A stretch of 64,000 nucleotides of DNA, from positions 1 through 64,000 of IMG/VR virus record IMGVR_UViG_3300020477_000990. One strand, given 5' to 3'. The notes under the pieces are model-generated. The model saw only the letters and a program-made list of their open reading frames with translations, did no database searches and was not told where the DNA came from. Position 1 is the stretch's first letter; every line of letters starts with the position of its first letter. Positions 3,874 through 62,418 of the stretch are shown here, in pieces. A program made the position numbers and the translations under genes.

Positions 3874-4190
3874 TAAGAAATCCTGGAATTTTATTTTTAA
3901 TGTTATTATGGATTACTGCGATTGTATTTTTACAAGGGTGTGCATTCCTTCCAACAACGGCTACAACAACAGCAACAGCATCAGGTTCTTATCAAACATA
4001 TAAAACAATTACTATTGCAAAAACAGGAGTTGATGGAGCACTTGCACTTCAAGATAAAAAAACAACTACTGATCATATTTTAGAAATTGTAACAGGTAAA
4101 GACTGTAAAATTATGAGAGCAGTTAAAGAAGAAAGTTTAACATTTTTCTGTGTTGATACAATACCAGAACATATACAATCTAGAGACTAA
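3870..4190 (+). CDS. Putative lipoprotein
   Basis: Hydrophobic signal ending in LQGC lipobox. Confidence 0.6.
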   Translation: MIRNPGILFLMLLWITAIVFLQGCAFLPTTATTTATASGSYQTYKTITIAKTGVDGALALQDKKTTTDHILEIVTGKDCKIMRAVKEESLTFFCVDTIPEHIQSRD

Positions 4191-4774: not shown

Positions 4775-5108
4775 AAAATTAGATATGAAAGCAGTAAAGA
4801 AAGAACTGGATGAAATGTTTGATAATTATAAACCAAATCAAAAAATAAAAAAAGAACCAGAAGTTATAGATTTGGTTGAACAAGTAGCAAGGGCAAATCA
4901 AAAAGAACGTGATGCATTTACTAGAGGATTAGTTGCAAAATGGCCTTTGTTAGCAAAACAAATTATGGATAGCATACAAGTTGAAATTTTTGAAGCACGA
5001 ATTAAAGAAGAGCAAGAAACTTTAGAACGTATTTCAGAAGAAGCACGTAAAGAGGATGAACCTCTAATATTAACAAAAGAAATGGAAGTAGGTAAAAATG
5101 GAAATTAA
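4767..5108 (+). CDS. Hypothetical protein
   Basis: ORF coupled to pepA. Confidence 0.6.
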   Translation: MVKKLDMKAVKKELDEMFDNYKPNQKIKKEPEVIDLVEQVARANQKERDAFTRGLVAKWPLLAKQIMDSIQVEIFEARIKEEQETLERISEEARKEDEPLILTKEMEVGKNGN

Positions 5109-48700: not shown

Positions 48701-51270
48701 CAGAAGTTACAGATGCTTCAACTAATACTGTTAATACATCACACATTATTGGTATTAAGGCTAGAGCAGGAAACTTTAAAGCAGGAAGTACTGCCACTAA
48801 CGCATATGGTTTATATGTTGACACATCAAAAGATGGTGCGGCAACTATAACAAATAGATATTCAATTTACGCACCACAGTCAAGTGATAAGGCATACTTT
48901 GCAGGTCAAGTACAAATAGGTGCATTTACAATACCAAATACAGATGGTACTAATGGACAATTTTTAAAAACAGATGGTGCTGGAAACCTTACATGGACAT
49001 CAATAACACAAGAAAATTTAGCAGATAATGATACAGATGATTTAAGTGAAGGTTCTTCTAACTTATACTTTACTAATGCAAGAGCAGATGCACGTATTGG
49101 AGCATCAAGTTTAAGTGATATATCAAATGTACACACAGCGGCTCCAACAGATGGTCAAGTACTTAAATGGGATAACGGAAATAGTAGATGGGCACCAGCG
49201 GCAGACACAGATACAGTTTATACTTCATTTAACTCAGACTTTGATACAAGATTAGCGGCAAAAGATACAGGTGATTTAAGTGAAGGAAGTAATTTATATT
49301 ACACAGATGCAAGAGCTGATGCAAGAATTACAAACGCATTAATTGATGAAGACAATATGGCTTCAGATAGTGCTACAAAATTACCATCACAACAATCAGT
49401 TAAGGCATACGTTGATTCACAAGTAGCAAGTGAAAATGAATTAAGCGAAATGAATGATGTAACTTTATCAGGTTTAGCATCAAGTCAATTCTTACAATAC
49501 AATGGTACTGCTTGGGTGAATGTAAGTAGTTCAGCAGTTCCGGCAGGCTCAGATACAGAAGTTCAATTTAATGATGGTGGTGGTTTTGCTGGTGATTCAG
49601 ACTTTACATATAATAAAACAACAAATAAAATTACAGTTGGATCAGTTACAACAACAGGTGCTTCACCGTCTATTTCATCTTCAGGTGCTTTAGGAATTTC
49701 AACTACAGCATCAAACAGCGATATTACAATTACACCACATGGTACTGGTGACATTGTACTTGATAGTCAAAAATGGCCACAGGCAGATGGTCCAGCAGGT
49801 TCATATTTAAAAACAGATGGTGCTAGTCAGTTAAGTTGGGACTTGTTAGATACAGATGATGTAGGTGAAGGCGGAAGATTATATTATACAACTGCAAGAG
49901 TTGATCAAAGAATTACAGGACAATGGTTAGTTGATGAAGATAATATGGCATCAGATAGTGATACTAAAATTCCTTCTCAACAATCAGTTAAAGCATACGT
50001 AGACGCACAGATTTTAACAAAAGATAATACAGATGAAATTGCAGAAGGTTCAACTAATCTTTATTATACAGATGCAAGAGCACAGGCAGTTTCAATTAAT
50101 AATTTAGTAGAAGATACTACTCCACAGTTAGGCGGTACACTTGATGCCAACAGTAATACAATTGACATGGGTACAAATATTATTACTGATGCAAAAGTTG
50201 GTAATTGGGATACAGCACATGGTTGGGGTGACCACTCAAGTGCAGGTTACTTAACATCAATTAGTGCAAATTCAATTAATGATACACACATTGATTGGGG
50301 AACAGGTGCTAATCAAGTATCATCAGCTGATGTTCCAGAACAAACAAATTTATATTACACAGATGCAAGAGCTGATGCAAGAATTGGAGCGGCAAGTATT
50401 AATGCATTATCAGATGTTAATACATCAGGTGCGGCAAATGGCAAGATATTAAAACACAATGGTACTGATTGGGTAGTAGCAGATGACTCAGGTGGTCCTG
50501 CAGATACAGATGCATTATCAGAAGGTTCAAGTAACTTATACTTTACTAATGCAAGAGCAGATGCACGTATAGCCGCGGCAACGTTTACTACACTATCAGA
50601 CGTAGATGCTGTAGTAGCCGGTGATGATGGTAAGATATTATACTACGATCATTCATCAACTTCATTTAAATGGAAAGCAGATGCAGGTGGTCCAGCAGAT
50701 ACTGATGCATTGTCAGAAGGTTCAAGTAACTTATACTTTACAAACGCAAGAGCTGATGCACGTATTGGAGCGGCGGATATAGCTGACTTAAACAATGTAC
50801 ACACAGCGGCGGCAACAGATGGACAAGTACTTACTTGGGATAATGGAAATTCAAGATGGGCACCAGCTGATGCAGGTGGTGGTGGAACAACCACAGTAGA
50901 AAGATTTAAAATTAACTATGCAACAAATGGTAACTTACAAAGTATTACAGATATAACATCTGGAATATCAGGAGTAAACATTGATTCAGCGGCAGGTGGT
51001 GATATTACAATTACATTTACAGGATACAGTTATCCACCAGCAGGTATATTATACTTTGGTTACAAATATGCATCAAATGAATATGATATTATGCCTTGGA
51101 ACAAAGACGTTACATTAAGAAAAGTACCAGGCGGTGGATCATCAGGATCTCCAACAGCATTTGGATCAATATCAACAATTTCAATTAAAGCGGCTGAAGG
51201 TGATACTGGAGCTTCAAGATCATTTGGTACAGTTACTCATGCATGGATACAATTGGTAATGGGAGGCTAG
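45733..51270 (+). CDS. Large repeat-rich tail fibre / virion adhesin (1845 aa)
   Basis: APGALDTLNELAAALGDD fibre motif; ~11 NLY(F/Y)T.AR repeats; GQVL.W repeats. Confidence 0.85.
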   Translation: MADNTGSNLGTGHIVFSSKVGNDLQFKTLVGGTNITLANTASEITITASNDTTALNIGTGSGIFTSKAGDNIQFKSLIANAASGISLTSNADDLTFQLVSANVDAGKLGGVAASDFLQKSNNLSGLTNLATARSNLSVYSKAEVDGFAVKNNANVLPSADNTWSLGDNSNRWAAIYANRFYGMATTAGSMASLNDITDVDTSGAVNNSVLKWNSSTSQWEIGVDSGGGGGSSSFVGLSDTPGNFTGDANKYVRVNAGETALEFVDGVATEAYVTTQVNNLIDSAPGALDTLNELAAALGDDANFSTTITNSIATKLATADFNNTFDTRFGNKNISDLSNVHTAAPTDGQVLSWDNGNSRWAPSNVGSGDITRVNITAGTGLSGTQDTTSGDHTQTLAVDVGTSAGKIVQLDGSAKLPAVDGSALTNLPAAYTNASVDAHLNQSNPTSGFVLSWNGSDYAWVTNAGYTDTDFDNRLATKSTTNLTEGTNLYYTDARVNARVGALGSANWDTAFGWGDHSSAGYLSSVALNNLTDVNTAGVANGKILKYNGTSWVVADDTGGPADTDALGEGSTNLYFTNARADARISAATFTTLSDVDAVVAGDNGKILYYDHGTTSFKWKVDAGGPADTDALAEGSTNLYFTNARVDTHLNQSNPTSGYVLSWNGSDYVWVANGTPGAITDIVNDATPQLGGTLDANGNTIDMGTNVLTDVNLGQFITAHGWGDHSGAGYLTSTGVISSHTDVHNAAATDGQVLKWDNANSRWAPANDTDTVYSSFNSDFDTRLTAKDTGDLSEGSNLYFTNARADARIGAASINALSDVDTSGAANGKILKHNGTSWVVADDTDTDTGILNVVEDTTPQLGGNLDVQTNTIKSSDNVQLGEGVSATGITGTLATRVSGFGAYFGFTSDNSKRHYNNVWQSKQTLSTNVDTGNKKQGWLIDSVLELDGNTHGANDTADVSKLFGDYSYTSLKSSSGNTSANGVVGHSFSAEVTDASTNTVNTSHIIGIKARAGNFKAGSTATNAYGLYVDTSKDGAATITNRYSIYAPQSSDKAYFAGQVQIGAFTIPNTDGTNGQFLKTDGAGNLTWTSITQENLADNDTDDLSEGSSNLYFTNARADARIGASSLSDISNVHTAAPTDGQVLKWDNGNSRWAPAADTDTVYTSFNSDFDTRLAAKDTGDLSEGSNLYYTDARADARITNALIDEDNMASDSATKLPSQQSVKAYVDSQVASENELSEMNDVTLSGLASSQFLQYNGTAWVNVSSSAVPAGSDTEVQFNDGGGFAGDSDFTYNKTTNKITVGSVTTTGASPSISSSGALGISTTASNSDITITPHGTGDIVLDSQKWPQADGPAGSYLKTDGASQLSWDLLDTDDVGEGGRLYYTTARVDQRITGQWLVDEDNMASDSDTKIPSQQSVKAYVDAQILTKDNTDEIAEGSTNLYYTDARAQAVSINNLVEDTTPQLGGTLDANSNTIDMGTNIITDAKVGNWDTAHGWGDHSSAGYLTSISANSINDTHIDWGTGANQVSSADVPEQTNLYYTDARADARIGAASINALSDVNTSGAANGKILKHNGTDWVVADDSGGPADTDALSEGSSNLYFTNARADARIAAATFTTLSDVDAVVAGDDGKILYYDHSSTSFKWKADAGGPADTDALSEGSSNLYFTNARADARIGAADIADLNNVHTAAATDGQVLTWDNGNSRWAPADAGGGGTTTVERFKINYATNGNLQSITDITSGISGVNIDSAAGGDITITFTGYSYPPAGILYFGYKYASNEYDIMPWNKDVTLRKVPGGGSSGSPTAFGSISTISIKAAEGDTGASRSFGTVTHAWIQLVMGG
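47395..50751 (+). repeat. Intragenic direct repeats in the fibre gene (~270-bp copies at ~47395-47667 and ~50479-50751; ~100-bp copies at ~48030 and ~49200)
   Basis: Near-identical in both DNA and protein. Confidence 0.85.
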
Positions 51271-51273
51271 TAG

Positions 51274-53250
51274 ATGGCCTACAAAACTAATTATATTGAT
51301 GTTAATAAACCAGCAAAAGTTTTAAGTTTAAACATTACATCAATTGCAAACAAAACACAATGGCCACATAATGATGGACAAGGTGATAAATGGTGGTCGA
51401 GTGGTTCAAATCCAAAATATTATCAATGGACAGTTCAAGGAACAGTAACAGCACAGAATCATGGTTCTCACTTAACAAGAAAAGATTTTCAATATAATGG
51501 ATTAGATATACAAGTAGGTGATTGGATTGCAGGTGCATCAACAGGATTATGTTGTAGAATTGTTTCTATATCAGCAAAAGCAACAGGTAGTTTTACCTGT
51601 ATTGTAGAAGATTGGTTAAGATATAATACATTTAGATCATCTTCAGGTTCTGGTATATTTGCTACAGGTACAGCGGTTTGTTTTCAATTAAATGAAAACG
51701 GACACCCTATGATAGATCCAGTACCAGCATCTATTACTTCTGGAACGTTTTATCAAAATATTAACTCAAGATTTCAATATTTAAATCCACAAATGCACTA
51801 TGTATTAGATCAAACAGCACATGGTTTTGCGGCAGGAGATGTTATATCAATTACAGGTTCAGGCTTTGCTAAAACAACAGGTGCAACAGCAAGTAAAACA
51901 ATTGGTACAGTAACTAATCCAGGACCAGGCCCAAATCAATTTATGTTAAGACCAAATACAAGAATTATTGATTTCAATCCTGCTATACCAGGATCAGTAG
52001 GTGATTTTATTTACACAGACAATAGTACAGCAGGTGGTTTAACAACTACTTCAACATCAGGTAAGATACAGTTTTTAAAAATAGCAGATGCTATTGCTTC
52101 ATCAGTTACAGGATCACAAGTAGACCCAACAACTACAGCAAGTGATGTTTTAGAAATTAATGAAATAGCGGTTACATTTACTGGTGGTAATTTGACACAA
52201 ACAATAACAGACATTAATGGTGGTACAGGAACGCATGGGGTTTCAGCATCAAGTTCACCTTCACCAACTACAGCAACCACGGCAGTAGAAAGTTTAGCTT
52301 ATGGACTAGTTGGTGTTTATCCAAATGGACAAATTACTATTAATGGTACTAATGTAACATTTACAACTACAACGGCTGGACAAGCGGCATATGGTATTGC
52401 AGTTGGTATTGCAGATGATATTATTGCAGATGTTAACGCGGCATCTCCAACAAATATTACAGCAAGTAAGTCAGGATCAAATGTTATATTAACAGAATCA
52501 CAAGGTAATGCAATTACAATTGTAAATGTACAAAATGATGGACAAGGTAATCCAGTAGCAGGTCCAAGTTCAGGTACAGGATGGGAATTGTCAACAAGTG
52601 CATCATCAGGTGCTTATATAAAATTAACAAGATCAGATGGTGGAGAAATTTTATTAGATGAAACAACTGGAACACCATTAAACGATTTAGGATTATTTTC
52701 CGTACATAATGGAAGACCACCGTTAGCAGTAACAGTAGAACAAGGTATTGTTGCAGGTGGCGGCGGAACAACTGTTGTAAATGATATAGCGGCAAGAAAT
52801 GCTTTATCTCCTTCAGTTGGAGATATGGTCTATGTAATTGATTCAGGTAATAGTGAGTATGCTTTCTATGTTTATAGTGGCGGTACTTGGAAATTACTTG
52901 CAGATGAAGATTCAGCAAATACAGATGCTAATACACTTTCAGCAACTATAACACAGGCAGGCGGCTCAGGTACAACAGCAATTGGAACAGTATCAGATGG
53001 TTCAAGAATAACATTAATTAGTGTAGAAGTTACAGTAGCATTTGACGATGCACCAACATTAACAATTGGTGACGCAAGTGATAATGATAGACTTGTTACT
53101 AATAATGAAATAGATTTAGGATCTGTAGGAACCTATGCAATACAGCCTGCTTATCAATACTCTACAGGTTCAGATGCGACTATAAATGCGTATTTTAATG
53201 TTGCAAGTGCAACAACAGGATCGGCTAAAATACTAGTTAGTTATATGTAA
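51274..53250 (+). CDS. Probable virion structural protein
   Basis: T/G/S-rich, beta-rich; follows the fibre gene. Confidence 0.75.
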   Translation: MAYKTNYIDVNKPAKVLSLNITSIANKTQWPHNDGQGDKWWSSGSNPKYYQWTVQGTVTAQNHGSHLTRKDFQYNGLDIQVGDWIAGASTGLCCRIVSISAKATGSFTCIVEDWLRYNTFRSSSGSGIFATGTAVCFQLNENGHPMIDPVPASITSGTFYQNINSRFQYLNPQMHYVLDQTAHGFAAGDVISITGSGFAKTTGATASKTIGTVTNPGPGPNQFMLRPNTRIIDFNPAIPGSVGDFIYTDNSTAGGLTTTSTSGKIQFLKIADAIASSVTGSQVDPTTTASDVLEINEIAVTFTGGNLTQTITDINGGTGTHGVSASSSPSPTTATTAVESLAYGLVGVYPNGQITINGTNVTFTTTTAGQAAYGIAVGIADDIIADVNAASPTNITASKSGSNVILTESQGNAITIVNVQNDGQGNPVAGPSSGTGWELSTSASSGAYIKLTRSDGGEILLDETTGTPLNDLGLFSVHNGRPPLAVTVEQGIVAGGGGTTVVNDIAARNALSPSVGDMVYVIDSGNSEYAFYVYSGGTWKLLADEDSANTDANTLSATITQAGGSGTTAIGTVSDGSRITLISVEVTVAFDDAPTLTIGDASDNDRLVTNNEIDLGSVGTYAIQPAYQYSTGSDATINAYFNVASATTGSAKILVSYM

Positions 53251-53258
53251 TTTTAACC

Positions 53259-53291
53259 AATTCCAGATAAATATGTGTATAGAATGGAGTT
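53259..53291 (+). promoter_or_regulatory. Late promoter inside an SD-sequestering hairpin
   Basis: AATTCCA/TGGAGTT stem; GATAAATA (53266-53273) in loop. Confidence 0.5.
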
Positions 53292-53294
53292 ATA

Positions 53295-53597
53295 ATGAGT
53301 AGACCAAAACCAGATATTTTATTAGAATTTACGAATCCAAAGAACTATAAGAGTGAACAGGTTCTTAAGGCCGAGGCAATCTATGCGGTTTTCTTTAAAG
53401 ATGCTCCAATCAATTTACGTTCATTAAATACTTTAGTGAACTACCCCGGACCTAAGTACAAAAAAGTCTCCTTTTCAAATTCAGGACACGCAATTAACCT
53501 TGCGGAAAAATTAAATTCATTATTCAAATGTGATGATTTTTCAGTCCACGTTTTAACAGCAGGAAAGAAACTTAATGTACAAGGACAACCAAAGTAA
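53295..53597 (+). CDS. Phage hypothetical protein (MSRPKP...)
   Basis: PGPKYKKVSFSNSGHA. Confidence 0.75.
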   Translation: MSRPKPDILLEFTNPKNYKSEQVLKAEAIYAVFFKDAPINLRSLNTLVNYPGPKYKKVSFSNSGHAINLAEKLNSLFKCDDFSVHVLTAGKKLNVQGQPK

Positions 53598-53964
53598 AAA
53601 AATCATTTTAGATTATTTAAAAAGTAAGAATGTGTCAGATGCACAGATGTTTACTATGTTTGTGAGTCGTATTGGCAAAGATTCTTTTGAGCAATCATTA
53701 AGATTAACAAAAATGGGTGTACAGGTATTAGAAGAACACTTTCCTTCTTATGTAATTAAAATTAAACAGCCTTTTACAGTTAAAGCAATTCATATACATA
53801 ATTTAGAACGTGAAATGCTATTACCTTATTATATAGATAATAAAAAAATTGTAGTTTTTAATGAAAAAGATGCAGTAGATCTAAAGTTAATTGACGGTGA
53901 TGTTGAGCTTTGGTCCAGAAATTTCAGCATAAACAACCAAGATTATTCTCCTAAATTTGACTAA
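53575..53964 (+). CDS. Hypothetical protein
   Basis: SLRLT..G; PYYI. Confidence 0.7.
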   Translation: MYKDNQSKKIILDYLKSKNVSDAQMFTMFVSRIGKDSFEQSLRLTKMGVQVLEEHFPSYVIKIKQPFTVKAIHIHNLEREMLLPYYIDNKKIVVFNEKDAVDLKLIDGDVELWSRNFSINNQDYSPKFD

Positions 53965-53971
53965 AAGAGGA

Positions 53972-54052
53972 TAAGTCATTGAAATCATTGGCTTTTTTCT
54001 GGCCATTTTTCTGACAAATAATGGTTGACAGATTTCTATATGATGCTATTAT
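53972..54052 (+). promoter_or_regulatory. Duplicated promoter cassette, copy 1 (IHF-like site + sigma70 promoter)
   Basis: TAAGTCATTGAAATCATTGGCTTTTTTCTG...ATAATGGTTGACAGATTTCTATATGATGCTAT. Confidence 0.8.
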
Positions 54053-54086
54053 ATAATTATAAACAAAAAAGCAGAAAGAGGCTAAA

Positions 54087-55178
54087 ATGGTGAAAACAAA
54101 TACAACAGAAACTAGAACAGTTAGACCAAGCGATGTTAAAGCAGAAGTTCTAGCCTGTATAGATGCAAAGAGACCTGTAATGTTATGGGGTCCTCCAGGC
54201 ATTGGAAAATCAGAAATTATTAATGAAATAGGACAAGACTTAAATCGTAATGTTATTGATTTAAGATTGTTATTATTGGAACCAACAGATTTACGTGGTA
54301 TTCCATATTTTAATTCGAAAGCGAATAAAATGGATTGGGCACCACCAGTAGATCTTCCAAGTGATCCTAAAGATAATTCAATATTATTTTTAGACGAAAT
54401 AAATGCCGCACCACAATCAGTACAGGCCGCGGCGTATCAATTAGTTCTTAATAGAAGAATTGGTACTTATAAATTACCAGATGGAGTATCAATTGTAGCG
54501 GCTGGTAATAGAGAAAGTGATAGAGGTGTTACTTATAGAATGCCTTCACCACTTGCTAACAGAATGTTACATATTGAGATGGCTGTTAATTTTGAAGATT
54601 GGCAGGATTGGGCAACCAAAAATGAAATCCATGCTGATGTAGTTGGATATTTAACATTTGCTAAAAATGATTTATATGACTTTGATCCTAGAAGTTCATC
54701 TAGAGCATTTGCAACACCAAGAAGTTGGTCGTTTGTAAGTGATATGCTAGAAACTGGAAAACTTGAAGGTTCAAGATTAACTGATATTATCACAGGGTCA
54801 GTTGGTGAAGGTCTTGCAGTAAAATTTATAGCACATAGAGATGTTGCTGGTAAATTACCTAACCCATCTGATATTTTAAGTGGTAAAGTTAAAAAACTTG
54901 ATACTAAAGAAGTTAGTGCTATGTATTCATTAATTACTTCATTATGTTATGAATTAAAAGATGAATGTGAAAAGGCTCAAAAATCTAAAAAGATGGCTGG
55001 GTGGCATAAAATGGCAGATAACTTTTTGCAGTATATGATGGATAATTTTGAAACTGAAATGGTAGTGCTAGGGGCAAGAATTGCTCTTAAAAATCATCAA
55101 CTACCGTTTAGTCCTAAAGAGCTAAAGAGCTTTAAGGACTTTTATAAGAGATATGGTAAGTTAATCGTTGACGTTTAA
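54087..55178 (+). CDS. MoxR-like AAA+ ATPase
   Basis: GPPGIGKS, LFLDEIN, AAGNR, PLANR, TPRSW. Confidence 0.9.
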   Translation: MVKTNTTETRTVRPSDVKAEVLACIDAKRPVMLWGPPGIGKSEIINEIGQDLNRNVIDLRLLLLEPTDLRGIPYFNSKANKMDWAPPVDLPSDPKDNSILFLDEINAAPQSVQAAAYQLVLNRRIGTYKLPDGVSIVAAGNRESDRGVTYRMPSPLANRMLHIEMAVNFEDWQDWATKNEIHADVVGYLTFAKNDLYDFDPRSSSRAFATPRSWSFVSDMLETGKLEGSRLTDIITGSVGEGLAVKFIAHRDVAGKLPNPSDILSGKVKKLDTKEVSAMYSLITSLCYELKDECEKAQKSKKMAGWHKMADNFLQYMMDNFETEMVVLGARIALKNHQLPFSPKELKSFKDFYKRYGKLIVDV

Positions 55179-55191
55179 TTTATCATTATAT

Positions 55192-55241
55192 GGGGACTAG
55201 GTCTACCTCTCTCTGCTCTTTCGGAAGACCGGTCCCCGCCA
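55192..55241 (+). ncRNA. tRNA-like minihelix RNA (7+5 bp, GCCA end, pyrimidine-rich loop)
   Basis: GGGGACT-A-GGTCT pairs with AGACC-GGTCCCC, followed by GCCA. Confidence 0.5.
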
Positions 55242-55255
55242 AATTATGATAAGTA

Positions 55256-55651
55256 TTGTATATGGACAAAGTGCTAATATTAATAAAATTAATTTCGTTA
55301 TTATATCCTAAGAAAAATTGGGATAAGAATTCTCATTTTATTTTTACACATCAAGATAGAAAATTAATGAAAGAGTATTTAAAGTCAGCAAAGAAAATGG
55401 GACTTCATAAAATATTAAGAGAAGTGAATTTAATAGATCATGATTTTTTATCTTATGAAAAAGGTGAAGTATATCATTTATATATTGGTCCTAAATATAT
55501 TTGGGATCATGATTATAAAATGCTTTGGAAACCCCATGAAGATAAAGGCATTTGGAAAATAGAAAAAATATTTAATGAAAAAATTTCTCATGTACCTAAA
55601 GTAATGGGACAAAAAATATTAGGTAATTATTCATCGAAAGGTAAGGAATGA
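55256..55651 (+). CDS. Hypothetical protein
   Basis: ORF. Confidence 0.55.
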   Translation: MYMDKVLILIKLISLLYPKKNWDKNSHFIFTHQDRKLMKEYLKSAKKMGLHKILREVNLIDHDFLSYEKGEVYHLYIGPKYIWDHDYKMLWKPHEDKGIWKIEKIFNEKISHVPKVMGQKILGNYSSKGKE

Positions 55652-55836
55652 AAATAACATTTTTAGATAAAAAATATGCAACAATGAGATATGAAAAACT
55701 TTTATCTAATTGTGATAAAGCATTATTAGAAGCAGAAGATCAATGGGCTATTACTTATTGGACTAATGTAAAAGAAAAATTAAGAAAAAATATGTCTAAA
55801 TTAGGTTTATTAAAAGGAAGTAAAATAGTTAACTAA
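55648..55836 (+). CDS. Hypothetical protein
   Basis: ATGA overlap. Confidence 0.6.
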   Translation: MKITFLDKKYATMRYEKLLSNCDKALLEAEDQWAITYWTNVKEKLRKNMSKLGLLKGSKIVN

Positions 55837-56109
55837 ATGGAACAACAATTTAATAACAAAGTATATCCAATTTATAAAAACGATATAGGTGTAAAAGAAA
55901 TACAGATAGGAGTAAAAAGTTTTATGTGTATGGGATGTTCACCACCAGATGATCACCCACACGTCTTTTTAACTATGGGAAATGATGAGTCATTAAATTG
56001 TATCTATTGCAATACAAAATATGTATATGATCATACACTAACATTTAGATATACTAATCCACCTGAGTGCTATGCAGGTGATAATATAATAGGTGAAAAA
56101 AATGAGTAA
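55837..56109 (+). CDS. zf-CHCC zinc-finger protein (alphaproteobacterial type)
   Basis: FMCMG.SPP.DHPHVFL.MG...CIYC. Confidence 0.82.
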   Translation: MEQQFNNKVYPIYKNDIGVKEIQIGVKSFMCMGCSPPDDHPHVFLTMGNDESLNCIYCNTKYVYDHTLTFRYTNPPECYAGDNIIGEKNE

Positions 56110-56401
56110 AGAAGAACTTTCAGTTTTGAAAAATCATAAGAGAAAGTTTTTAGGAATGCCAGCGGTTTGTGAAAATTATTTTGGTAAAAAGTATAAACAC
56201 AATGTTCATTTTCCTACAAAGAATGTAGCTGAAAATATAGGTAACTGGCTTGAAACAGGACCACAGGGTAAATGGGGTTGGTATTATGAAGCCCATAAAA
56301 CTGATATGGAAATGATGTATGATGAACCAGTTAGAAAAGAACACGTGGTATTATCATTTGAAAATGGAGAAGATGCTTTAATATGCCAAATGAAAAAGTA
56401 G
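56093..56401 (+). CDS. Hypothetical protein
   Basis: ORF. Confidence 0.6.
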   Translation: MKKMSKEELSVLKNHKRKFLGMPAVCENYFGKKYKHNVHFPTKNVAENIGNWLETGPQGKWGWYYEAHKTDMEMMYDEPVRKEHVVLSFENGEDALICQMKK

Positions 56402-56763
56402 AAATAGAAGAATATAAAGTTAAAAAAAATAAATCTACTTATCGTAAAAAGAGTAATGAAGAATTAAAACAATTGGCTATTGAATGTTATCGAGGATCAG
56501 TATTTACAAGTTACCAAATACATCAGCAAGATATGAATATGTTGCAATCAATTTTTATGCCATTAGCATTTATGAACCCAGCACAATTAAAAGATACATA
56601 TAAAGATAAGCCTCATATGTATTATTCACACGAGAAAGATGCATTTCCAACTGGAATAAATGGATATGGCTGTTATGGATCTGTAGCATATCTTAATAAA
56701 GAAGATGGAGATCGTTTTAGAAAATACTATAATGCAATAGAAGAAAAACTAGAAAAATTATAA
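56383..56763 (+). CDS. Hypothetical protein
   Basis: ORF; PTGINGY. Confidence 0.65.
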   Translation: MPNEKVEIEEYKVKKNKSTYRKKSNEELKQLAIECYRGSVFTSYQIHQQDMNMLQSIFMPLAFMNPAQLKDTYKDKPHMYYSHEKDAFPTGINGYGCYGSVAYLNKEDGDRFRKYYNAIEEKLEKL

Positions 56764-57002
56764 TGCAAATATCATCACACGAATTTATGGAATTAGATCA
56801 AGATTATTATGTGATAGATATACATACAGTTTTTGAATCAAAAGAAGATAAATTAATAGAAGATGTATTAAAAAAACACACAACAGGTTGGTATTATAAA
56901 GCAGGATCATTTTTTGCATTTGAAAAAGCAAAAGATAGAGATATTGTAAAAGGTGCATTGGCTTGGGATAAGTTAACAAAGAGTTTTAAAAAAGATGAGT
57001 AA
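56763..57002 (+). CDS. Hypothetical protein
   Basis: TAATG coupling. Confidence 0.6.
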   Translation: MQISSHEFMELDQDYYVIDIHTVFESKEDKLIEDVLKKHTTGWYYKAGSFFAFEKAKDRDIVKGALAWDKLTKSFKKDE

Positions 57003-57177
57003 TGTATATTACAAGGTTACAGTCACTAAAAACGATATGGAATGTACTTTATATTGGTGGGAAAAAACATATAAAAAGTTAATGGAATCAGTTGACTTAT
57101 TGTATAAATGTGCTAAAGTAGATGCAGTAGAATTAGAAATGGTTACAAAGGAAGAATATGATGAAAATTTTGTATAA
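56995..57177 (+). CDS. Hypothetical protein
   Basis: Overlapping start. Confidence 0.55.
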   Translation: MSNVYYKVTVTKNDMECTLYWWEKTYKKLMESVDLLYKCAKVDAVELEMVTKEEYDENFV

Positions 57178-57186
57178 GGAAATATT

Positions 57187-57507
57187 ATGACAGTAAAAAA
57201 GACAATAAAAGATGTGGTAGAAGAACAGGTCACACTCGCCATACAAGATAAGAAAAAACTAATTAAAAAGGTAACACCATTACATGATAGGTCATGGTAT
57301 GTTAAATGGGTATCCTCTTTTATTATAATAATAGCAATGGCACTTACAGCTCTAGATTGGCATCCGTACAATTTGTTTTTTCATTTAGTTGGTGTAACAG
57401 GATGGGGAATTGTTGGATATCTATGGCACGATAGAGCATTAATGTTATTAAATGGAATAGCCGTTGGTATATTTACGGCCGGAATTATCGGATTTTATAC
57501 AGGGTAA
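57187..57507 (+). CDS. Small membrane protein (DUF6552-like)
   Basis: SWYVKW...PYN...GW..VG.LWHDRAL..LN. Confidence 0.7.
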   Translation: MTVKKTIKDVVEEQVTLAIQDKKKLIKKVTPLHDRSWYVKWVSSFIIIIAMALTALDWHPYNLFFHLVGVTGWGIVGYLWHDRALMLLNGIAVGIFTAGIIGFYTG

Positions 57508-57574
57508 GTCATTGAAATCATTGGCTTTTTTCTGATCAGATAATGGTTGACAGAATTCTATATGATGCTATACT
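57505..57574 (+). promoter_or_regulatory. Duplicated promoter cassette, copy 2
   Basis: 30-bp block identical to 53972-54001; 32-bp block with 1 mismatch to 54018-54049. Confidence 0.8.
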
Positions 57575-57604
57575 ATATATATAATTAGAAAAAGGAAGAG
57601 CTAG

Positions 57605-58855
57605 ATGACTTTTAAAACAACAACAAAATCAAAGATTAATAAGAAGCCAAAAATAGTGGCACAAACAGATGATGAAATTCGTGAAAGAATTGTACAAAGT
57701 AGAGTAAGACTTCTTTTAAAACATCCATTCTTTGGTAATCTAGCAACAAGATTGAAACTTAAAAACGCAGATGATTTTTGTCCTACCGCGGCAACTGATG
57801 GTAGACATTTTTATTATAATAGAGAATTTATTACTCCGTTAACACCTGAAGAATTAGACTTTCTTGTAGGCCATGAAGTGATGCATTGTGTTTATGATCA
57901 TATGGAAAGAAGAGAAGGAAGAAATCCTCAAATTTGGAATATGGCAACGGACTATGTGATAAATGGTCAGCTTGTTCGTGAAGGTCTTGGTAAAATGCCA
58001 AAACAAGGATTGCACGATTCAAAATATTATGATAAAAATTCAGATGAAGTATATCAAGATTTAGAGAAAAATGCAGTAGAAATTAAAGTTACTTTAGATA
58101 TGCATATGGATGGTGAAGGTCAACAAGGTAAAGGTGATCAACAAAATCCTGGAGACAAAGATGGTGAAGGTAAAGAAAAAATGCCAGTTATGTCTAAAGA
58201 AGAAAAAGAAAAATTAAAAGACGAAGTTAAAAATGCAGTATTACAAGCGGCACAGGCGGCAGGTGCTGGTAATGTTCCAAAAGGTGTTGAAAGACTTATT
58301 AAAAATATTACAGAACCTAAAATGGATTGGCGTTCGTTATTAGATCAGCATATTACATCAGTTGTAAAATCAGACTATTCATTTATGAGACCTTCAAGAA
58401 AAGGTTGGTCAGTAGATGCAGTATTACCTGGATTACAACCAGAACCAGCAGTAGATGTATGTGTTGCAATTGATACTTCAGGTTCTATTAGTGATAAGCA
58501 GTTGCAAACATTTTTAGCTGAAGTAAAAGGTATTATGGATTCATTCCAAGATTATAAAATACATATATGGAGTTTTGATACAGATGTTCATAATCCAGAA
58601 GTGTTTACACCAGATAAAGATATTACAGATTATAAGCCTGGTGGCTTTGGTGGTACAGAATTTACTGCCAATTGGGAATGGATGAAAGAAGAAGGTATAC
58701 AGCCTAAAAAATTAATTGTATTTACAGATGGTTATCCTTGGGGTTCATGGGGTGATGAAAACTATTGTGATACACTTTGGGTAATTCATTCTAATCACGA
58801 TAAAGATTTAGAAGCACCTTTTGGTGTAACTTGTCATTATGATGAGGTTGCTTAA
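57605..58855 (+). CDS. Metallopeptidase-like (HExxH) + VWA protein, DUF2201-type MoxR partner
   Basis: TAATDG, HEVMH, IDTSGS MIDAS, GGT.F, FTDG. Confidence 0.88.
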   Translation: MTFKTTTKSKINKKPKIVAQTDDEIRERIVQSRVRLLLKHPFFGNLATRLKLKNADDFCPTAATDGRHFYYNREFITPLTPEELDFLVGHEVMHCVYDHMERREGRNPQIWNMATDYVINGQLVREGLGKMPKQGLHDSKYYDKNSDEVYQDLEKNAVEIKVTLDMHMDGEGQQGKGDQQNPGDKDGEGKEKMPVMSKEEKEKLKDEVKNAVLQAAQAAGAGNVPKGVERLIKNITEPKMDWRSLLDQHITSVVKSDYSFMRPSRKGWSVDAVLPGLQPEPAVDVCVAIDTSGSISDKQLQTFLAEVKGIMDSFQDYKIHIWSFDTDVHNPEVFTPDKDITDYKPGGFGGTEFTANWEWMKEEGIQPKKLIVFTDGYPWGSWGDENYCDTLWVIHSNHDKDLEAPFGVTCHYDEVA

Positions 58856-58953
58856 TGCTTTGGTTTTTATTATTTCTTTTACTATCAATTTATGCATTTG
58901 GATTTAAAAATGTTTTAAGGGTTAGTTTACTAACCTTTGCTATGCTATTTGTA

Positions 58954-59178
58954 TTAGTTGTTTTTCTTGGAGTTATGGCATAACCTATCATCTAGGTGCT
59001 CACTAATTTTTTTAACTAGTTTAGAACTAGTATTTTCAAATATAAAAGGAAAGAAGGCATGAATAAATGTCATCATGCATAAAAGTAAAAATTTTATGCT
59101 ATATGATAATGAATGTATCATATGAGTGAAGTATGATTCACCGACACTATTAGGATGTTTCATAAATAGGTTTTTCAT
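58954..59178 (-). CDS. Small protein (DUF6356-like)
   Basis: F.KHPNSVGESYF.H...IHAFFPF.F...SS. Confidence 0.7.
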   Translation of the reverse strand: MKNLFMKHPNSVGESYFTHMIHSLSYSIKFLLLCMMTFIHAFFPFIFENTSSKLVKKISEHLDDRLCHNSKKNN

Positions 59179-59182
59179 TTTA

Positions 59183-59707
59183 CTACTCTATATTAGAATA
59201 GTCTACTGTAGAAGTATAATCGCGACACATTTGAGATTTTTCAAGTAGACCTTTAACAACATTAGCTATCATGGCAGGGTTTTCTTTGCCTTGTGCTAAC
59301 ACTAAACCTATAGACTGTTGAGTCTGGACCTGGTTACGTCTCATTTGTTCTATTAATCCTGGTAAAGGAAAATTGTAATCTTTTATTAATTTTTTAATAA
59401 CCATTTGAGATTTACTTTCAAACATTTGCCTTTGTGCTTTAATATTTGCAAGTAGTTCTTGCATACGTTGTAAATATTCTGTTGGGTAGCCTAAATTTGA
59501 ACCTACACCATAATTAACAGCCACTAACATCATTAAGTTATCATGGATTGCTCCACAGACAGTATATTCTCTAAAGTCACTTGCTATTGCTTGATATGTT
59601 GCATCGTTTGTATAGTCATGATTTTCATCTGGGTAAGTAACTGCTTGAACTGATGTTGTTAAACAGAATAGTATTACAAAAATAAAACCGACAATGCTCT
59701 TTCTCAT
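59183..59707 (-). CDS. Secreted hypothetical protein
   Basis: Signal peptide ending VQA; 174 aa. Confidence 0.7.
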   Translation of the reverse strand: MRKSIVGFIFVILFCLTTSVQAVTYPDENHDYTNDATYQAIASDFREYTVCGAIHDNLMMLVAVNYGVGSNLGYPTEYLQRMQELLANIKAQRQMFESKSQMVIKKLIKDYNFPLPGLIEQMRRNQVQTQQSIGLVLAQGKENPAMIANVVKGLLEKSQMCRDYTSTVDYSNIE

Positions 59708-59785
59708 AATAATATTTAACTATATATTTTTCTATAATAACATACTGGTTAACTTGTAGTTTAGTTTAAGATAAATATTTTTGAA

Positions 59786-60322
59786 ATGAGTTCCACCTTA
59801 ATATTAAATTCAACTGGTTCCCCTTTAAGTTTACTTCCTATTAGTGCGGTTAATTGGCATTTATCAATTAAATTACTTGTTTTAGATAAGTTTAAGGTAT
59901 TAGATGAATATGAAGATTGGATTATCCACAGCCCATCAATGGAAATGAAAGTTCCAGCGGTAATGATAGCAAAAAGATATTTAAATTTAACAAGATATCC
60001 AAAGTTTTCGCGGGGTAATGTATATCTAAGAGATTTATTCACTTGTCAGTATTGTGGTTGTGAGCATGGCTGGAATGATTTAACATTAGATCATGTACTT
60101 CCAAGAGCAAAAGGAGGCAGGTCAGCTTGGGAAAACATTGTGACTGCCTGTCATGATTGTAATGTATCAAAAGGTGATGATAAGTTATCTCCAATGAAAG
60201 ATCCATATAAGCCACATTATTGGGAATTGGCCAATAAAAGAGCCAGGTATCCTGTTAAAGTTGGCCATCATAGTTGGGTAAAATATCTAAAATGGAATGA
60301 AAATCTTATTAATGTTGCATAA
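59786..60322 (+). CDS. HNH endonuclease
   Basis: RD.FTCQYCG, LTLDHVLPRAKGG..WENIVTAC..CN. Confidence 0.9.
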   Translation: MSSTLILNSTGSPLSLLPISAVNWHLSIKLLVLDKFKVLDEYEDWIIHSPSMEMKVPAVMIAKRYLNLTRYPKFSRGNVYLRDLFTCQYCGCEHGWNDLTLDHVLPRAKGGRSAWENIVTACHDCNVSKGDDKLSPMKDPYKPHYWELANKRARYPVKVGHHSWVKYLKWNENLINVA

Positions 60323-60330
60323 AATAAAGG

Positions 60331-60360
60331 TTGACAATAAATATTAAAGTATACTATAAT
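60331..60360 (+). promoter_or_regulatory. Sigma70-type promoter
   Basis: TTGACA-N18-TATAAT. Confidence 0.65.
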
Positions 60361-60382
60361 AGAACAATAAGGAGTAAAAAAT

Positions 60383-60718
60383 ATGGCCGATACTCAAGAA
60401 GTAAAAAAACAAGAAGCAGTAGCACCTAGCCCAGATCAGGCAGTTGCTCCTCAATTAACAATTGCAGACTTAACACAATTGTTGAATATAATTGATGCCG
60501 CTTCTTCAAGAGGAGCCTTCAGAGCCAATGAACTTACTAACGTTGGTAGTGTAGTTGATAAACTTTCTAAGTTTTTACAATACGTTACAGACCAACAAAA
60601 AGCAGAAGCTGAAGCGAAAGCTAAAGCAGAAGGCGGATCAGTTGACGCAGGAACCGTAAGTGGTACTGATGCATCAGCTGGAAGTGGTTCAGGTGAATCT
60701 GAAGCTTCGAAAAAATAA
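60383..60718 (+). CDS. Phage hypothetical protein
   Basis: AAGGAG RBS; IID.ASSRGAFRANEL. Confidence 0.8.
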   Translation: MADTQEVKKQEAVAPSPDQAVAPQLTIADLTQLLNIIDAASSRGAFRANELTNVGSVVDKLSKFLQYVTDQQKAEAEAKAKAEGGSVDAGTVSGTDASAGSGSGESEASKK

Positions 60719-60750
60719 ATGAATAATAATTGCAATTAAGGAGAAACATC

Positions 60751-61377
60751 ATGACTGACATGATTAAACATACAGGTAGGATAGACTCAACTAACAGACG
60801 TGTTATTGTTGTATTTCCACAAATTCCTGAAGATCAAGAAAATTGTCTTGTAGTTGATGTTGATTCATTACCAGAGAAATATCACGATGGTTTAATGAAA
60901 ATAGTTGAATCAGCAGAATCGCAAGAATCAAATCAGTTGTATGAAGTATTAGGAAGAAATTTATTTTGGGATGGTAAAAATTGTTTGTCAACTTTGCACG
61001 AACAAGGTTTTTTAAGACGTGTTCCTGTTAATACAGTTACATTATTACCAAGACCAGATCAGTCTCTTCCATTAAAAGACTTTAATGCATACCAAAGTAT
61101 GGTAGCTGAAACAAAAACAACACCAGCAGAACCTACTGATGCTCAAACTACACGAGCTGGGGATATTACAAATCCAGCAGATGAAACTGACAGCGAAGGT
61201 ATAGCAAGAAATCTTTTAGTGCAGGCAGAATTACTTGAAAATGAAGCACGTCAAAAACGTGCAGAAGCAGAACAAGTGTCACCTGGTATACAGGTTAAAT
61301 TAGGTAAAGTTACTACCGTTGTTACAAAACGTGGTAGAGGAAGACCTAAAAAAGCCGAAGCTACAACGACTGCGTAA
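60751..61377 (+). CDS. Phage hypothetical protein with C-terminal AT-hook-like RGRGRPKK
   Basis: AAGGAG RBS; basic tail. Confidence 0.75.
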   Translation: MTDMIKHTGRIDSTNRRVIVVFPQIPEDQENCLVVDVDSLPEKYHDGLMKIVESAESQESNQLYEVLGRNLFWDGKNCLSTLHEQGFLRRVPVNTVTLLPRPDQSLPLKDFNAYQSMVAETKTTPAEPTDAQTTRAGDITNPADETDSEGIARNLLVQAELLENEARQKRAEAEQVSPGIQVKLGKVTTVVTKRGRGRPKKAEATTTA

Positions 61378-61393
61378 TTAATAATTATTAATT

Positions 61394-61439
61394 AATCTGC
61401 CTATGTTTTATGATAAATATTACGTAGGCAGATTTTTTT
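61394..61439 (+). terminator. Terminator-like hairpin containing a late promoter
   Basis: AATCTGCCTATGT/ACGTAGGCAGATT plus T-run; GATAAATA (61412-61419) in loop. Confidence 0.7.
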
Positions 61440-61790
61440 ATGACAGAAGAGCAAAATTCAAATAGAAAATTTTTACCATCTAAAGAATCGGGAGATCACG
61501 ATCATGCGGAATTTAATAAAATAATGCATGAAATTGCTCCAAAAGAAATTCCAGCTAAATTTGTTGATATGATTAAAATTATCCGTAAAGATGGAACTGT
61601 TACTAATATGACAAGAGATGATATTGTTAATACTGTTCCTCTTGCAGGTCCAGTTGATTGGGAAAGCATAGCTGGTAATTATCATGATATCCGCGATATG
61701 GAAATTTATATAGATATGGATGCCTTAGAATATACAGTTCATAAAAATGTTCATCGAATGCTTGGTAAATTCTTTAAAAAAAGCAATTAA
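61440..61790 (+). CDS. Hypothetical protein
   Basis: ORF. Confidence 0.7.
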   Translation: MTEEQNSNRKFLPSKESGDHDHAEFNKIMHEIAPKEIPAKFVDMIKIIRKDGTVTNMTRDDIVNTVPLAGPVDWESIAGNYHDIRDMEIYIDMDALEYTVHKNVHRMLGKFFKKSN

Positions 61791-61821
61791 TTGACAATCT
61801 TATTAAAATATGTTATAAATA
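61791..61821 (+). promoter_or_regulatory. Overlapping early and late promoter
   Basis: TTGACA-N17-TATAAA; the -10 also reads TATAAATA. Confidence 0.7.
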
Positions 61822-61866
61822 CTAATACAAATTACCGTATTAAACAATAGGGGTTGGGGTAATATT

Positions 61867-62418
61867 ATGATAAAAACTATTTTAGCATTTCTTTATATTT
61901 CAGGCATTCTTGCCTTGGGAAGATTAATTCCACATCCACCAAACTTAACACCAATATTAGCCGCGGCTATTTTCGCTCCATACATTATTAATGATCGTTG
62001 GACAGCAATTGCAATTCCTTTAATGGCGATGTTTATTGCAGATTTAGTTATAGGGTTTCATCCATATATGTTATGGGTCTATGGTGCAATAGGTTTATCA
62101 ACTTTAATTAGTAAATGGTCAATGCAATTTAATAAAAAGTATATTCAATTAGGAGCAATGACAATAGTATCTTCTGTATTATTTTTTATAATAACAAATT
62201 TTGCAGTATGGACTATGTGGGATTACTATCCAAAAACATTAGATGGTTTAATAATGTGTTATACAATGGCAATACCATTTTTTCAAAATACATTATTAGG
62301 AACTATAATATATACAGCTCTAATGGCATCTTTAACTGTAGCATTAACTCGACCTTTTGAAAATACCTATGTACTGGTAATAAGCAAAGGAAGAGATTAT
62401 GTTAACAAACATTTTTAA
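61867..62418 (+). CDS. BtuM-like (DUF6580) ECF S-component membrane transporter
   Basis: RLIPHPPNLTPI, SSVLFFIITNFAVW, YP.T..GL..CY..AIPFF.N; ~6 TM. Confidence 0.78.
   Translation: MIKTILAFLYISGILALGRLIPHPPNLTPILAAAIFAPYIINDRWTAIAIPLMAMFIADLVIGFHPYMLWVYGAIGLSTLISKWSMQFNKKYIQLGAMTIVSSVLFFIITNFAVWTMWDYYPKTLDGLIMCYTMAIPFFQNTLLGTIIYTALMASLTVALTRPFENTYVLVISKGRDYVNKHF

What the first reader, a model, noticed from the sequence alone, without database searches (positions are those of the whole stretch)
53972..58855. MoxR ATPase and VWA-peptidase genes split apart but driven by a duplicated promoter cassette
Seen: a 30-bp identical block and a 32-bp block with one mismatch precede both 54087 and 57605, and I saw them nowhere else in the window. 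TAAGTCATTGAAA reads TTTCAATGACTTA on the other strand, one mismatch from the IHF consensus WATCAANNNNTTR. Spacing to the -35 differs by 11 bp, about one helical turn, so phase is preserved. Established: MoxR and VWA proteins act as pairs. Inference: a dedicated co-regulated early regulon; the repeats could also delete the 3.5 kb between them.
Basis: partly seen in the sequence, partly recalled or inferred. Interest (0 to 1): 0.6.

Follow-up and report, generated by a model that had tools for sequence, protein, structure and literature searches.

The report
Paired portable promoter cassettes, marine jumbo phage
The two repeats are real: they are two near-identical copies of a portable host-type promoter cassette that a 328-kb marine T4-like phage uses about two dozen times, kept alike by recombination, so they are not a private switch for the MoxR and VWA genes.

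Summary
Block A (30 bp, exact) and block B (32 bp, 1 mismatch) precede both genes, and the A-to-B gap is 16 versus 5 nt.

Block B is a near-consensus sigma-70 promoter with an extended -10. It is the best-matched pair in a family of about 22 strong promoters in this 328-kb phage, which has a T4-type capsid and no RNA polymerase or sigma factor of its own.

In distant relatives MoxR and VWA are adjacent, separated only by a terminator plus a promoter. So each gene always had its own promoter. The split here is a later insertion of eight ORFan genes into that spacer.

Block A occurs at five places in the genome and is conserved in relatives. Its hairpin potential is not conserved. The positions that stay constant form a lambda-H'-like IHF site on the bottom strand: A-tract, 8 nt, WATCAA-like core, 4 nt, TTR. 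It always sits 52-53 or 41-42 bp before the -35.

Three dispersed copies share derived bases, which points to gene conversion.

The closest known system is the PeSL cassettes of T4-type phages. "Dedicated regulon" is not supported. The IHF idea is plausible but untested. No deletion joint was seen in the metagenome contigs.

The parts
53972..54001 (+). Block A, copy 1. Upstream module ending in T6. The bottom strand reads A6, 8 nt, TTTCAA, 4 nt, TTA (an IHF H'-like layout). It can also form a weak hairpin followed by a U-run. It begins 53 bp before the -35.
54002..54017 (+). Linker, copy 1 (16 nt against 5 nt in copy 2). It contains a second T-run, as in the MoxR cassettes of relatives.
54018..54052 (+). 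Block B, copy 1. Promoter with -35 TTGACA at 54025-54030, a 16-nt spacer, TG at 54044-54045 and -10 TATTAT at 54047-54052. PWM score 38 bits.
54087..55178 (+). MoxR-type AAA+ ATPase gene (363 aa). Purine-rich ribosome-binding site at 54073-54081.
55192..55238 (+). Conserved GC-rich stem-loop right after the MoxR stop, with no T-run. Its pyrimidine loop is invariant in relatives. It lies where distant relatives have the MoxR terminator.
55256..57507 (+). Eight small ORFs with no PHROG match; the last is Pfam DUF6552. The block evolves fast (25-71% aa against relatives, compared with 83-90% for the flanking genes). It has no family promoter inside.
57505..57534 (+). Block A, copy 2. Its first three bases are the stop codon of the DUF6552 ORF. 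It begins 42 bp before the -35.
57540..57574 (+). Block B, copy 2. Promoter with -35 at 57547-57552, a 16-nt spacer, TG, and -10 TATACT at 57569-57574. PWM score 36 bits.
57605..58855 (+). Gene for a DUF2201_N metallopeptidase-like domain (HEVMH) plus a VWA-like domain (DTSGS), 416 aa.

Best explanation
The window is the first 64 kb of a complete 328-kb marine phage. It has a T4-type major capsid protein and no detectable RNA polymerase or sigma factor, so it must use the host enzyme. The two repeats are two copies of a composite, portable regulatory cassette.

The core (block B) is a near-consensus extended -10 promoter for the host's primary sigma factor: GGTTGACAGA, 3 nt, CTATA, 3 nt, TGCTAT and a -10 hexamer. 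It is one of about 22 strong promoters of this family in the genome, nearly all on the plus strand.

MoxR and VWA are an old gene pair, and each has long had its own promoter. In distant relatives they are adjacent, with a terminator and a promoter in the spacer. In this clade eight ORFans were inserted into that spacer. That gives two units: P1 - MoxR - stem-loop - ORFans, and P2 - VWA.

The near-identity of the two cassettes, which ends at the -10 and at the left edge of block A, comes from recent recombination or gene conversion between paralogous cassettes. This is the behaviour described for PeSL cassettes of T4-type phages. It gives both genes the same promoter strength and timing as a by-product.

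Block A is an optional upstream module. I think it most likely acts at the DNA level as a site for a bending protein (IHF-like), phased one helical turn apart in the two cassette types, rather than as an RNA terminator.

Shown: the repeats, the promoter family, the ancestral adjacency, and the conservation and spacing of block A. Inferred: host RNA polymerase use and early timing, gene conversion, and the role of block A.
For: Genome and phage type.

Promoter family: 20 plus-strand and 2 minus-strand sites at 18 bits or more, against 0 in a shuffled genome; consensus. The cultured relative PA5oct depends on host RNA polymerase and has 32 putative TTGAC/TATAATA promoters (PMC7318152).

Ancestral state: in most of the ~30 loci at 45-60% aa identity, MoxR and VWA lie 24-230 nt apart (a few 500-900 nt, with one small ORF between). 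In most of them the gap holds a GC-rich hairpin, a T-run and a TTGACn/TATAAT promoter. Phosso is the same. PA5oct was split independently by a homing endonuclease and hypothetical genes.

Close relatives (L003-L005, and L039 upstream of MoxR) carry the same cassette type.

Concerted evolution: window copies 53972, 57505 and 129782 share derived bases. These are absent from relatives and from the ancestral-looking copy at 127988. The B blocks are identical within L003 and within L005 but differ between genomes.

Block A acting on DNA rather than RNA:
- There is no consensus hairpin, and relatives fold at only -0.5 to -2 kcal/mol.
- The invariant positions are the A-tract, TCAA and TTA.
- The IHF core is exact in 5 of 10 copies and one base off in 3; with L039, 11 copies are known, 4 of them one base off.
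- The layout equals lambda H' (site anatomy in PMC1874591).
- Only two spacings occur, -52/-53 and -41/-42, even though the linkers differ in sequence.
- The copy at 129782 lies between divergent promoters, where no gene ends.

A metagenome variant has a joint exactly at the left edge of block A, copy 2.
Against: - There are no transcript 5' or 3' ends. Only contigs were available, so promoter use, timing and termination are untested.
- The host is unknown, so the presence of IHF is unknown. The phage encodes no HU/IHF homologue.
- The window copies miss the well-conserved A of WATCAA.
- The window copies do fold (-6 to -10 kcal/mol, z -2.2 and -2.8) and are followed by U6. The copy at 185968 is a good terminator hairpin at -16 kcal/mol. 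So a terminator role is not excluded.
- The block A copies are related by descent and come from few genomes, so conservation and fixed spacing carry limited weight.
- No recombinant joint between the two cassettes was seen.
Confidence: 0.6

Rival explanations
1. Block A is the stem-loop terminator of a classical PeSL. It ends the upstream unit (o129, or the MoxR-ORFan unit) and insulates the promoter that follows. The IHF likeness would then be a by-product of an AT-rich hairpin plus a T-run.
For: The hairpin plus U6 folds at -6 to -10 kcal/mol, with z -2.2 and -2.8. Block A sits right at stop codons. Relatives have true terminators at this position before the VWA promoter. The copy at 185968 is a 7-bp stem at -16 kcal/mol. 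7 of 22 family promoters have an upstream hairpin plus T-run of -6 kcal/mol or better, against 6% of random sites.
Against: RNAalifold finds no common structure, and the relatives' copies fold at -0.5 to -2 kcal/mol. The copy at 129782 lies between divergent promoters with no gene ending there. A terminator would not need two fixed, helically phased distances to the -35.
Confidence: 0.25
2. One reading: a dedicated, IHF-dependent early regulon made to keep the split MoxR and VWA genes co-expressed.
For: The two cassettes are the most similar pair in the genome. L019 also has MoxR and VWA promoters that share a private 17-nt stretch. The pair is conserved, and the complex prediction gave weak support: 0.58 against a best control of 0.00, runs agreeing in at least 77% of contacts, partner pLDDT at least 70.
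Against: The same promoter subfamily and block A also precede unrelated genes at 129897 and 186040. A separate VWA promoter predates the split. Most distant relatives have dissimilar MoxR and VWA promoters.
Confidence: 0.12
3. Block A has no function of its own. It is passenger sequence copied along with the promoter by duplication or conversion.
For: All copies are homologous and come from few lineages. Three window copies are identical over 18-30 nt, which fits recent copying.
Against: Block A persists upstream of MoxR down to 69% aa identity (L039), while the linker next to it is replaced and its length is kept. One copy stands alone without a promoter at 127988.
Confidence: 0.15

Closest known systems
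PeSL (promoter-early stem-loop) cassettes of T4-type phages (Arbiol et al. 2010, PMC2839356; Comeau et al. 2014, PMC4122927)
   Same: - A composite element with a strong, near-consensus sigma-70 promoter and an upstream module ending in a T-run.
- Many copies per genome.
- Copies flank ORFans in a fast-evolving stretch inside a T4-type genome.
- Copies lie at the borders of gene-content differences between close relatives.
- Direct repeats are long enough for phage recombination.
   Different: - The stem-loop is weak here and is not conserved in relatives.
- What is conserved is an IHF-like sequence at fixed, phased distances.
- The host phage is a 328-kb marine jumbo phage of the PA5oct/Phosso/Rak2 neighbourhood.
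- One cassette pair brackets a conserved gene (MoxR) as well as the ORFans.
- No mini-circle or deletion was observed.
Host-polymerase promoters of jumbo phage PA5oct (Lood et al. 2020, PMC7318152)
   Same: PA5oct is a related phage (VWA protein 46% identical). It depends on host RNA polymerase and has 32 putative TTGAC/TATAATA promoters. Its ATPase and VWA-like genes are also split by inserted genes.
   Different: The sequences differ. No block A is visible upstream of its ATPase or VWA gene.
IHF sites upstream of phage early promoters (lambda pL, Mu Pe) and the lambda attP H' site
   Same: The layout is the same: A-tract, 8 nt, WATCAA-type core, 4 nt, TTR (H' read from NC_001416; site elements in PMC1874591). 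The site lies some 50-90 bp upstream of the start of a strong sigma-70 promoter. The pL and Mu Pe examples are from my own knowledge.
   Different: Binding is untested and the host is unknown. The window copies have T where the consensus has its second base, A.
MoxR AAA+ / VWA partner pairs (RavA-ViaA, CbbQ-CbbO, NorQ-NorD; Pfam bpMoxR note)
   Same: An AAA+ MoxR-type ATPase paired with a VWA/MIDAS protein, conserved as neighbours.
   Different: The VWA partner carries an N-terminal HExxH peptidase-like domain (DUF2201_N). The function in phages is unknown. The genes are in separate transcription units.

Membership tests
PeSL cassette | Strong sigma-70-like promoter (-35, about 17 nt, -10) followed by a ribosome-binding site and start codon | tested here: met
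   11/12 hexamer matches with TG extension at both copies. PWM scores 38 and 36 bits, against 0 shuffled hits at 18 bits or more. Purine-rich ribosome-binding sites lie before both ATGs.
PeSL cassette | Stem-loop terminator just upstream of the promoter | tested here: inconclusive
   The window copies fold at -6 to -10 kcal/mol and are followed by U6. The relatives' copies fold at -0.5 to -2 kcal/mol with no consensus structure. 7 of 22 family promoters have a hairpin plus T-run.
PeSL cassette | Many copies, associated with ORFans and with indels between close relatives | tested here: met
   About 22 promoters. Eight ORFans without a PHROG match lie between the two copies. The block is 25-71% identical against 83-90% for the flanks, and part of its content is replaced. 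A strain variant has a joint at the edge of block A.
PeSL cassette | Recombination between copies giving deletions or mini-circles | tested here: inconclusive
   There is no 54001-to-57505-type joint in the contigs of 4 runs, and contigs drop rare forms. Shared derived bases among paralogous copies point to conversion.
IHF binding site | WATCAR, 4 nt, TTR core | tested here: inconclusive
   12/13 in the window copies and at 129782. Exact at 185968 and in four cassettes of L003/L004. Absent in L005. Background is 3.5 sites per kb at up to 1 mismatch and 0.17 per kb exact.
IHF binding site | A-tract of 4-6 A in the other half-site, at H'-like spacing | tested here: met
   A6-7 lies 8 nt from the core in all copies. 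The composite pattern hits 6 loci in the genome, 5 of them A blocks, against a mean of about 1.6 hits in shuffles. Lambda H' has the same layout.
IHF binding site | Host encodes IHF and the protein binds the site | not testable with these tools
   The host is unknown. The phage has no Bac_DNA_binding gene. Cultured relatives infect Proteobacteria.
MoxR-type AAA+ ATPase | AAA_3/AAA_5 domain with Walker A and Walker B | tested here: met
   AAA_3 at 29.7 bits and AAA_5 at 28.4 bits, both above cut-off. GPPGIGKS and LFLDE are present.
DUF2201 metallopeptidase-VWA protein | DUF2201_N plus the DUF2201 VWA-like domain, with HExxH and MIDAS DxSxS | tested here: met
   156.8 and 77.2 bits. HEVMH and DTSGS are present.

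The most novel reading that the evidence does not exclude
The MoxR/VWA pair of this phage lineage may be tied together by two layers that PeSL cassettes are not known to have.

(1) The stem-loop module has been replaced by a helically phased IHF-type bending site. This site tunes, or makes host-state dependent, a subset of early promoters.

(2) A conserved stem-loop at the 3' end of MoxR has an invariant pyrimidine loop complementary to the unusual AG-repeat ribosome-binding sites of MoxR and VWA. It could act as an anti-Shine-Dalgarno element that couples their translation.
Probability: 0.15. Interest if true: 0.6.

Novelty: new variant of a known kind. Interest (0 to 1): 0.35.

Why it matters
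- PeSL-type portable promoter cassettes were described in T4-type coliphages and vibriophages. This result suggests they also shape gene order in uncultured marine jumbo phages.
- It gives a concrete case in which a conserved two-gene partnership was pulled apart by ORFan insertion without losing matched expression signals.
- If the upstream module is a phased IHF-type site, it would link a subset of phage early promoters to a host nucleoid protein. It would also hint that the host is a proteobacterium.
- For annotation, the promoter model gives about 22 transcription-unit starts in a genome with almost no known functions.

Tried and rejected
- Megablast of the region against 50,697 phage records found no match.
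- Rfam found nothing in 50000-64000 or in the promoter-rich 127-139.5 kb stretch.
- PHROGs found nothing for the eight ORFans or for the two genes upstream of MoxR.
- My first extended -10 pattern search used the wrong spacing and returned nothing. This was corrected.
- Deletion test: contigs of two DNA and two RNA-library runs show no joint between the two cassettes. Contigs cannot exclude rare forms.
- Expression: the RNA-library contigs lie on MoxR and some ORFans but not on VWA up to 58400. Because these are contigs and DNA carry-over is possible, I draw no conclusion.
- PA5oct supplementary tables, wanted for the temporal class of its ATPase and VWA genes, are not held.
- The VWA gene was not found in the L039 record, because that contig ends about 1.1 kb after MoxR.
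- Complex prediction for MoxR with VWA gave only weak support: 0.58 against a best control of 0.00. The test's own calibration: 51 of 78 solved complexes and 2 of 108 mismatched pairs reached the pass mark, but only 5 of those 78 solved complexes did so at 0.60 or under, as did all 4 of the 180 mismatches (harder ones counted) that passed.
- A cyanophage origin was considered: no psbA was found.
- A phage-encoded HU/IHF, sigma factor or RNA polymerase was looked for: none was found. The T7-type polymerase search had no positive control.
- The large protein searches were not used, as the operators advised. Pfam settled both proteins.
Full report
**1. Observation**

- Block A (30 nt) lies at 53972 and 57505 with no mismatch.
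- Block B (32 nt) lies at 54018 and 57540 with one mismatch.
- Searches allowing 3 mismatches find only these two copies in the window, and none in 100 shuffles.
- The similarity runs from 53968/57501 (33/34) to just past the -10 (40/48 over the next 48 nt). It stops sharply on both sides: 8/40 on the left, 18/40 on the right.
- The A-to-B linker is 16 nt in copy 1 and 5 nt in copy 2.

The gene calls hold.
- 54087-55178 is a MoxR-type AAA+ ATPase (AAA_3, AAA_5, Walker A and B).
- 57605-58855 has DUF2201_N (HEVMH) and a DUF2201 VWA-like domain (DTSGS).

**2. Genome context**

- The window is bases 1-64000 of a 328,149-bp IMG/VR virus record with terminal repeats, rated complete, at 31.8% GC.
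- The phage has a T4 gp23-type capsid gene (E = 6e-97).
- It has no match to RNA polymerase beta, T7-type polymerase, sigma-70 region 2, HU/IHF or psbA. The T7-type polymerase search had no positive control, so that one absence is not shown.
- The DNA occurs in marine metagenomes from ten studies.
- The nearest cultured relatives of the VWA protein are jumbo myoviruses of Proteobacteria: Phosso, PA5oct, Atu_ph07 and the GAP32 group, at 36-47% identity.
- PA5oct depends on the host polymerase and has 32 putative TTGAC/TATAATA promoters (PMC7318152).

**3. Block B is one member of a promoter family**

- Each copy has TTGACA, a 16-nt spacer, a TG extension and TATTAT or TATACT.
- Genome-wide, a weight matrix built from 19 such sites finds 20 plus-strand and 2 minus-strand sites at 18 bits or more. 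A shuffled genome gives none.
- The two copies score 38 and 36 bits, among the top four.
- Seven sites share the conserved spacer form (GA, 3 nt, CTATA).
- Downstream genes are diverse: a cell-wall hydrolase, a polysaccharide lyase, another AAA protein, a glycine-zipper lipoprotein and ORFans.

The promoter type is therefore a general class, presumably early and read by the host enzyme. It is not a private MoxR/VWA signal.

**4. The split is derived; separate promoters are ancestral**

A scan of IMG/VR with the VWA protein gave 31 loci.
- In loci at 45-60% identity, the module o100 - o129 - MoxR - VWA is kept. MoxR and VWA lie 24-230 nt apart (a few 500-900 nt, with one small ORF between); L022 and L031 have no MoxR within the fetched flank.
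- In most of them that gap holds a GC-rich hairpin, a T-run and then a TTGACn/TATAAT promoter. Phosso is the same.
- PA5oct was split independently by three hypothetical genes and a homing endonuclease.
- Three close relatives (L003-L005; MoxR about 90%, VWA 83-85%) share the window's layout. Small ORFs (3.1-4 kb between MoxR and VWA) lie between them, only 25-71% identical and partly replaced. These ORFs have no PHROG match.
- No family promoter lies inside the block. It is probably read from the MoxR promoter.

**5. The cassettes evolve in concert**

- L003-L005 carry the same cassette type before both genes, and L039 (MoxR 69% identical) carries it before MoxR.
- Within L003 and within L005 the two B blocks are identical, yet they differ between genomes at spacer positions.
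- In the window genome, the block A copies at 53972, 57505 and 129782 share derived bases. These are not found in relatives, nor in the window's own ancestral-looking copy at 127988.
- The copy 1 linker looks chimeric. It has the second T-run typical of MoxR cassettes and the ATAATGG typical of VWA cassettes.
- A metagenome contig variant skips 57162-57504 (the DUF6552 ORF), and its right joint falls exactly on the first base of block A, copy 2.

This is the behaviour reported for PeSL cassettes: strong sigma-70 promoters with an upstream stem-loop, clustered among ORFans, recombining to shuffle genes and to form mini-circles (PMC2839356; PMC4122927). No joint between the two window cassettes was seen in the contigs of four runs. 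That cannot exclude rare events. Such a deletion would also remove MoxR.

**6. What block A is**

*Terminator reading.*
- The window copies fold at -6 to -10 kcal/mol and are followed by U6 (z -2.2 and -2.8).
- They abut stop codons.
- Relatives have true terminators at that place.
- The copy at 185968 is a good hairpin, and 7 of 22 family promoters have an upstream hairpin plus T-run, against 6% of random sites.

*Evidence against the terminator reading.*
- RNAalifold finds no shared structure among eight copies, and the relatives' copies fold at only -0.5 to -2 kcal/mol.
- The copy at 129782 sits between divergent promoters, where no gene ends.

*What is conserved.*
- The conserved positions are a sequence on the bottom strand: an A6-7 tract, 8 nt, a WATCAA-like core, 4 nt and TTA.
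- The core is exact in five of ten copies and one base off in three, including both window copies. L039's copy, found later, is also one base off, so 11 copies are known and 4 of them are one base off.
- The composite pattern marks six loci in 328 kb, five of them A blocks, against a mean of about 1.6 hits in shuffles.
- This is the layout of the lambda attP H' site, read here from NC_001416. It also matches the four-element description of IHF sites (PMC1874591; bioRxiv 10.1101/382655).
- Block A starts either 52-53 bp or 41-42 bp before the -35: the MoxR type, 129782 and L039 at the first distance; the VWA type and 185968 at the second. The linkers differ in sequence.

I rate a DNA-level, IHF-like role at about 0.4, a terminator role at about 0.25-0.3, and no function at about 0.15. 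The caveats are that the copies are homologous and come from few lineages, the host is unknown, and the window copies miss one conserved consensus base.

**7. The protein pair**

Conserved adjacency across about 30 loci supports a functional MoxR/VWA pair. The complex prediction gave weak support: median score 0.58, best control 0.00, runs agreeing in at least 77% of contacts, partner pLDDT at least 70. The mark was reached by 51 of 78 solved complexes and 2 of 108 mismatched pairs, but passes at 0.60 or under are often wrong.

**8. Side finding**

- Right after the MoxR stop lies a GC-rich stem-loop (55192-55238) with no T-run: -28.4 kcal/mol for the 91-nt stretch, z -3.45.
- It is conserved in L003-L005 and L039, with compensatory stem changes and an invariant pyrimidine loop.
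- The loop is complementary to the AG-repeat ribosome-binding sites of MoxR and VWA.
  - The best near-match to its reverse complement in the whole genome is the MoxR leader.
  - By duplex energy, MoxR ranks 7th and VWA 17th of 405 ORF starts.
  - In L003-L005, MoxR ranks 1st and VWA 2nd to 4th of 29-38.
- This is a lead for post-transcriptional coupling, not a result.

**9. Verdict**

The repeats are real and non-random. They are best read as two recombining copies of a PeSL-like portable promoter cassette in a marine T4-type jumbo phage. They flank MoxR and an ORFan insertion that split an old MoxR/VWA pair. The 'dedicated regulon' reading is not supported. The IHF idea is strengthened but unproven.

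Noticed in passing
window 55192-55238 (+); L003 about 4895-4945; L004 about 3944-3993; L005 about 4003-4052; L039 about 1062-1108 (-): A conserved GC-rich stem-loop lies right after the MoxR stop, with no T-run. It shows compensatory stem changes and an invariant pyrimidine loop (CCTCTCTCTGCT). The loop is complementary to the AG-repeat ribosome-binding sites of MoxR (rank 7 of 405 in the genome; rank 1 in three relatives) and of VWA (rank 17 of 405; ranks 2-4). It may be an anti-Shine-Dalgarno or RNA-stability element.
   Followed up: partly
window 57162-57504: One marine metagenome (X4) holds a contig variant that skips the DUF6552 ORF. Its right joint lies exactly at the first base of block A, copy 2 (depth 16.6, against 28.8 for the reference form).
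   Followed up: no
G000 127000-139500 (locus L053): A dense cluster of 13 of the 22 strong family promoters lies here, including two divergent pairs at about 128.2 kb and 129.8 kb. They drive small ORFs, a cell-wall hydrolase, a polysaccharide lyase and an AAA protein. It looks like the main early or hyperplastic region of the phage.
   Followed up: partly
G000 127988-128015 (- strand): A stand-alone block A of the ancestral (relative-like) sequence type, with no promoter after it. It lies 13 nt before a small minus-strand ORF and about 145 nt downstream of the minus-strand promoter at 128198.
   Followed up: no
window 1-76, 1346-1420, 3625-3700: Three tRNA genes (Ala-TGC, Gly-GCC, Trp-CCA) lie at the left end of the genome. 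A family promoter at 3393 has its -35 inside a hairpin.
   Followed up: no
locus L019 (and L030), upstream of MoxR and of VWA: In this distant relative the MoxR and VWA promoters share a private 17-nt stretch covering the spacer and the -10. This is a second, independent case of matched promoters for this gene pair.
   Followed up: no
window 54196-56809: Contigs from two marine metatranscriptome libraries lie on MoxR and several ORFans. None lies on VWA up to 58400. These are contigs only, so transcription is not shown.
   Followed up: partly
window 58916-58939: A hairpin lies between the end of VWA and the convergent minus-strand ORF 59183-59707. It is a likely two-way terminator.
   Followed up: no
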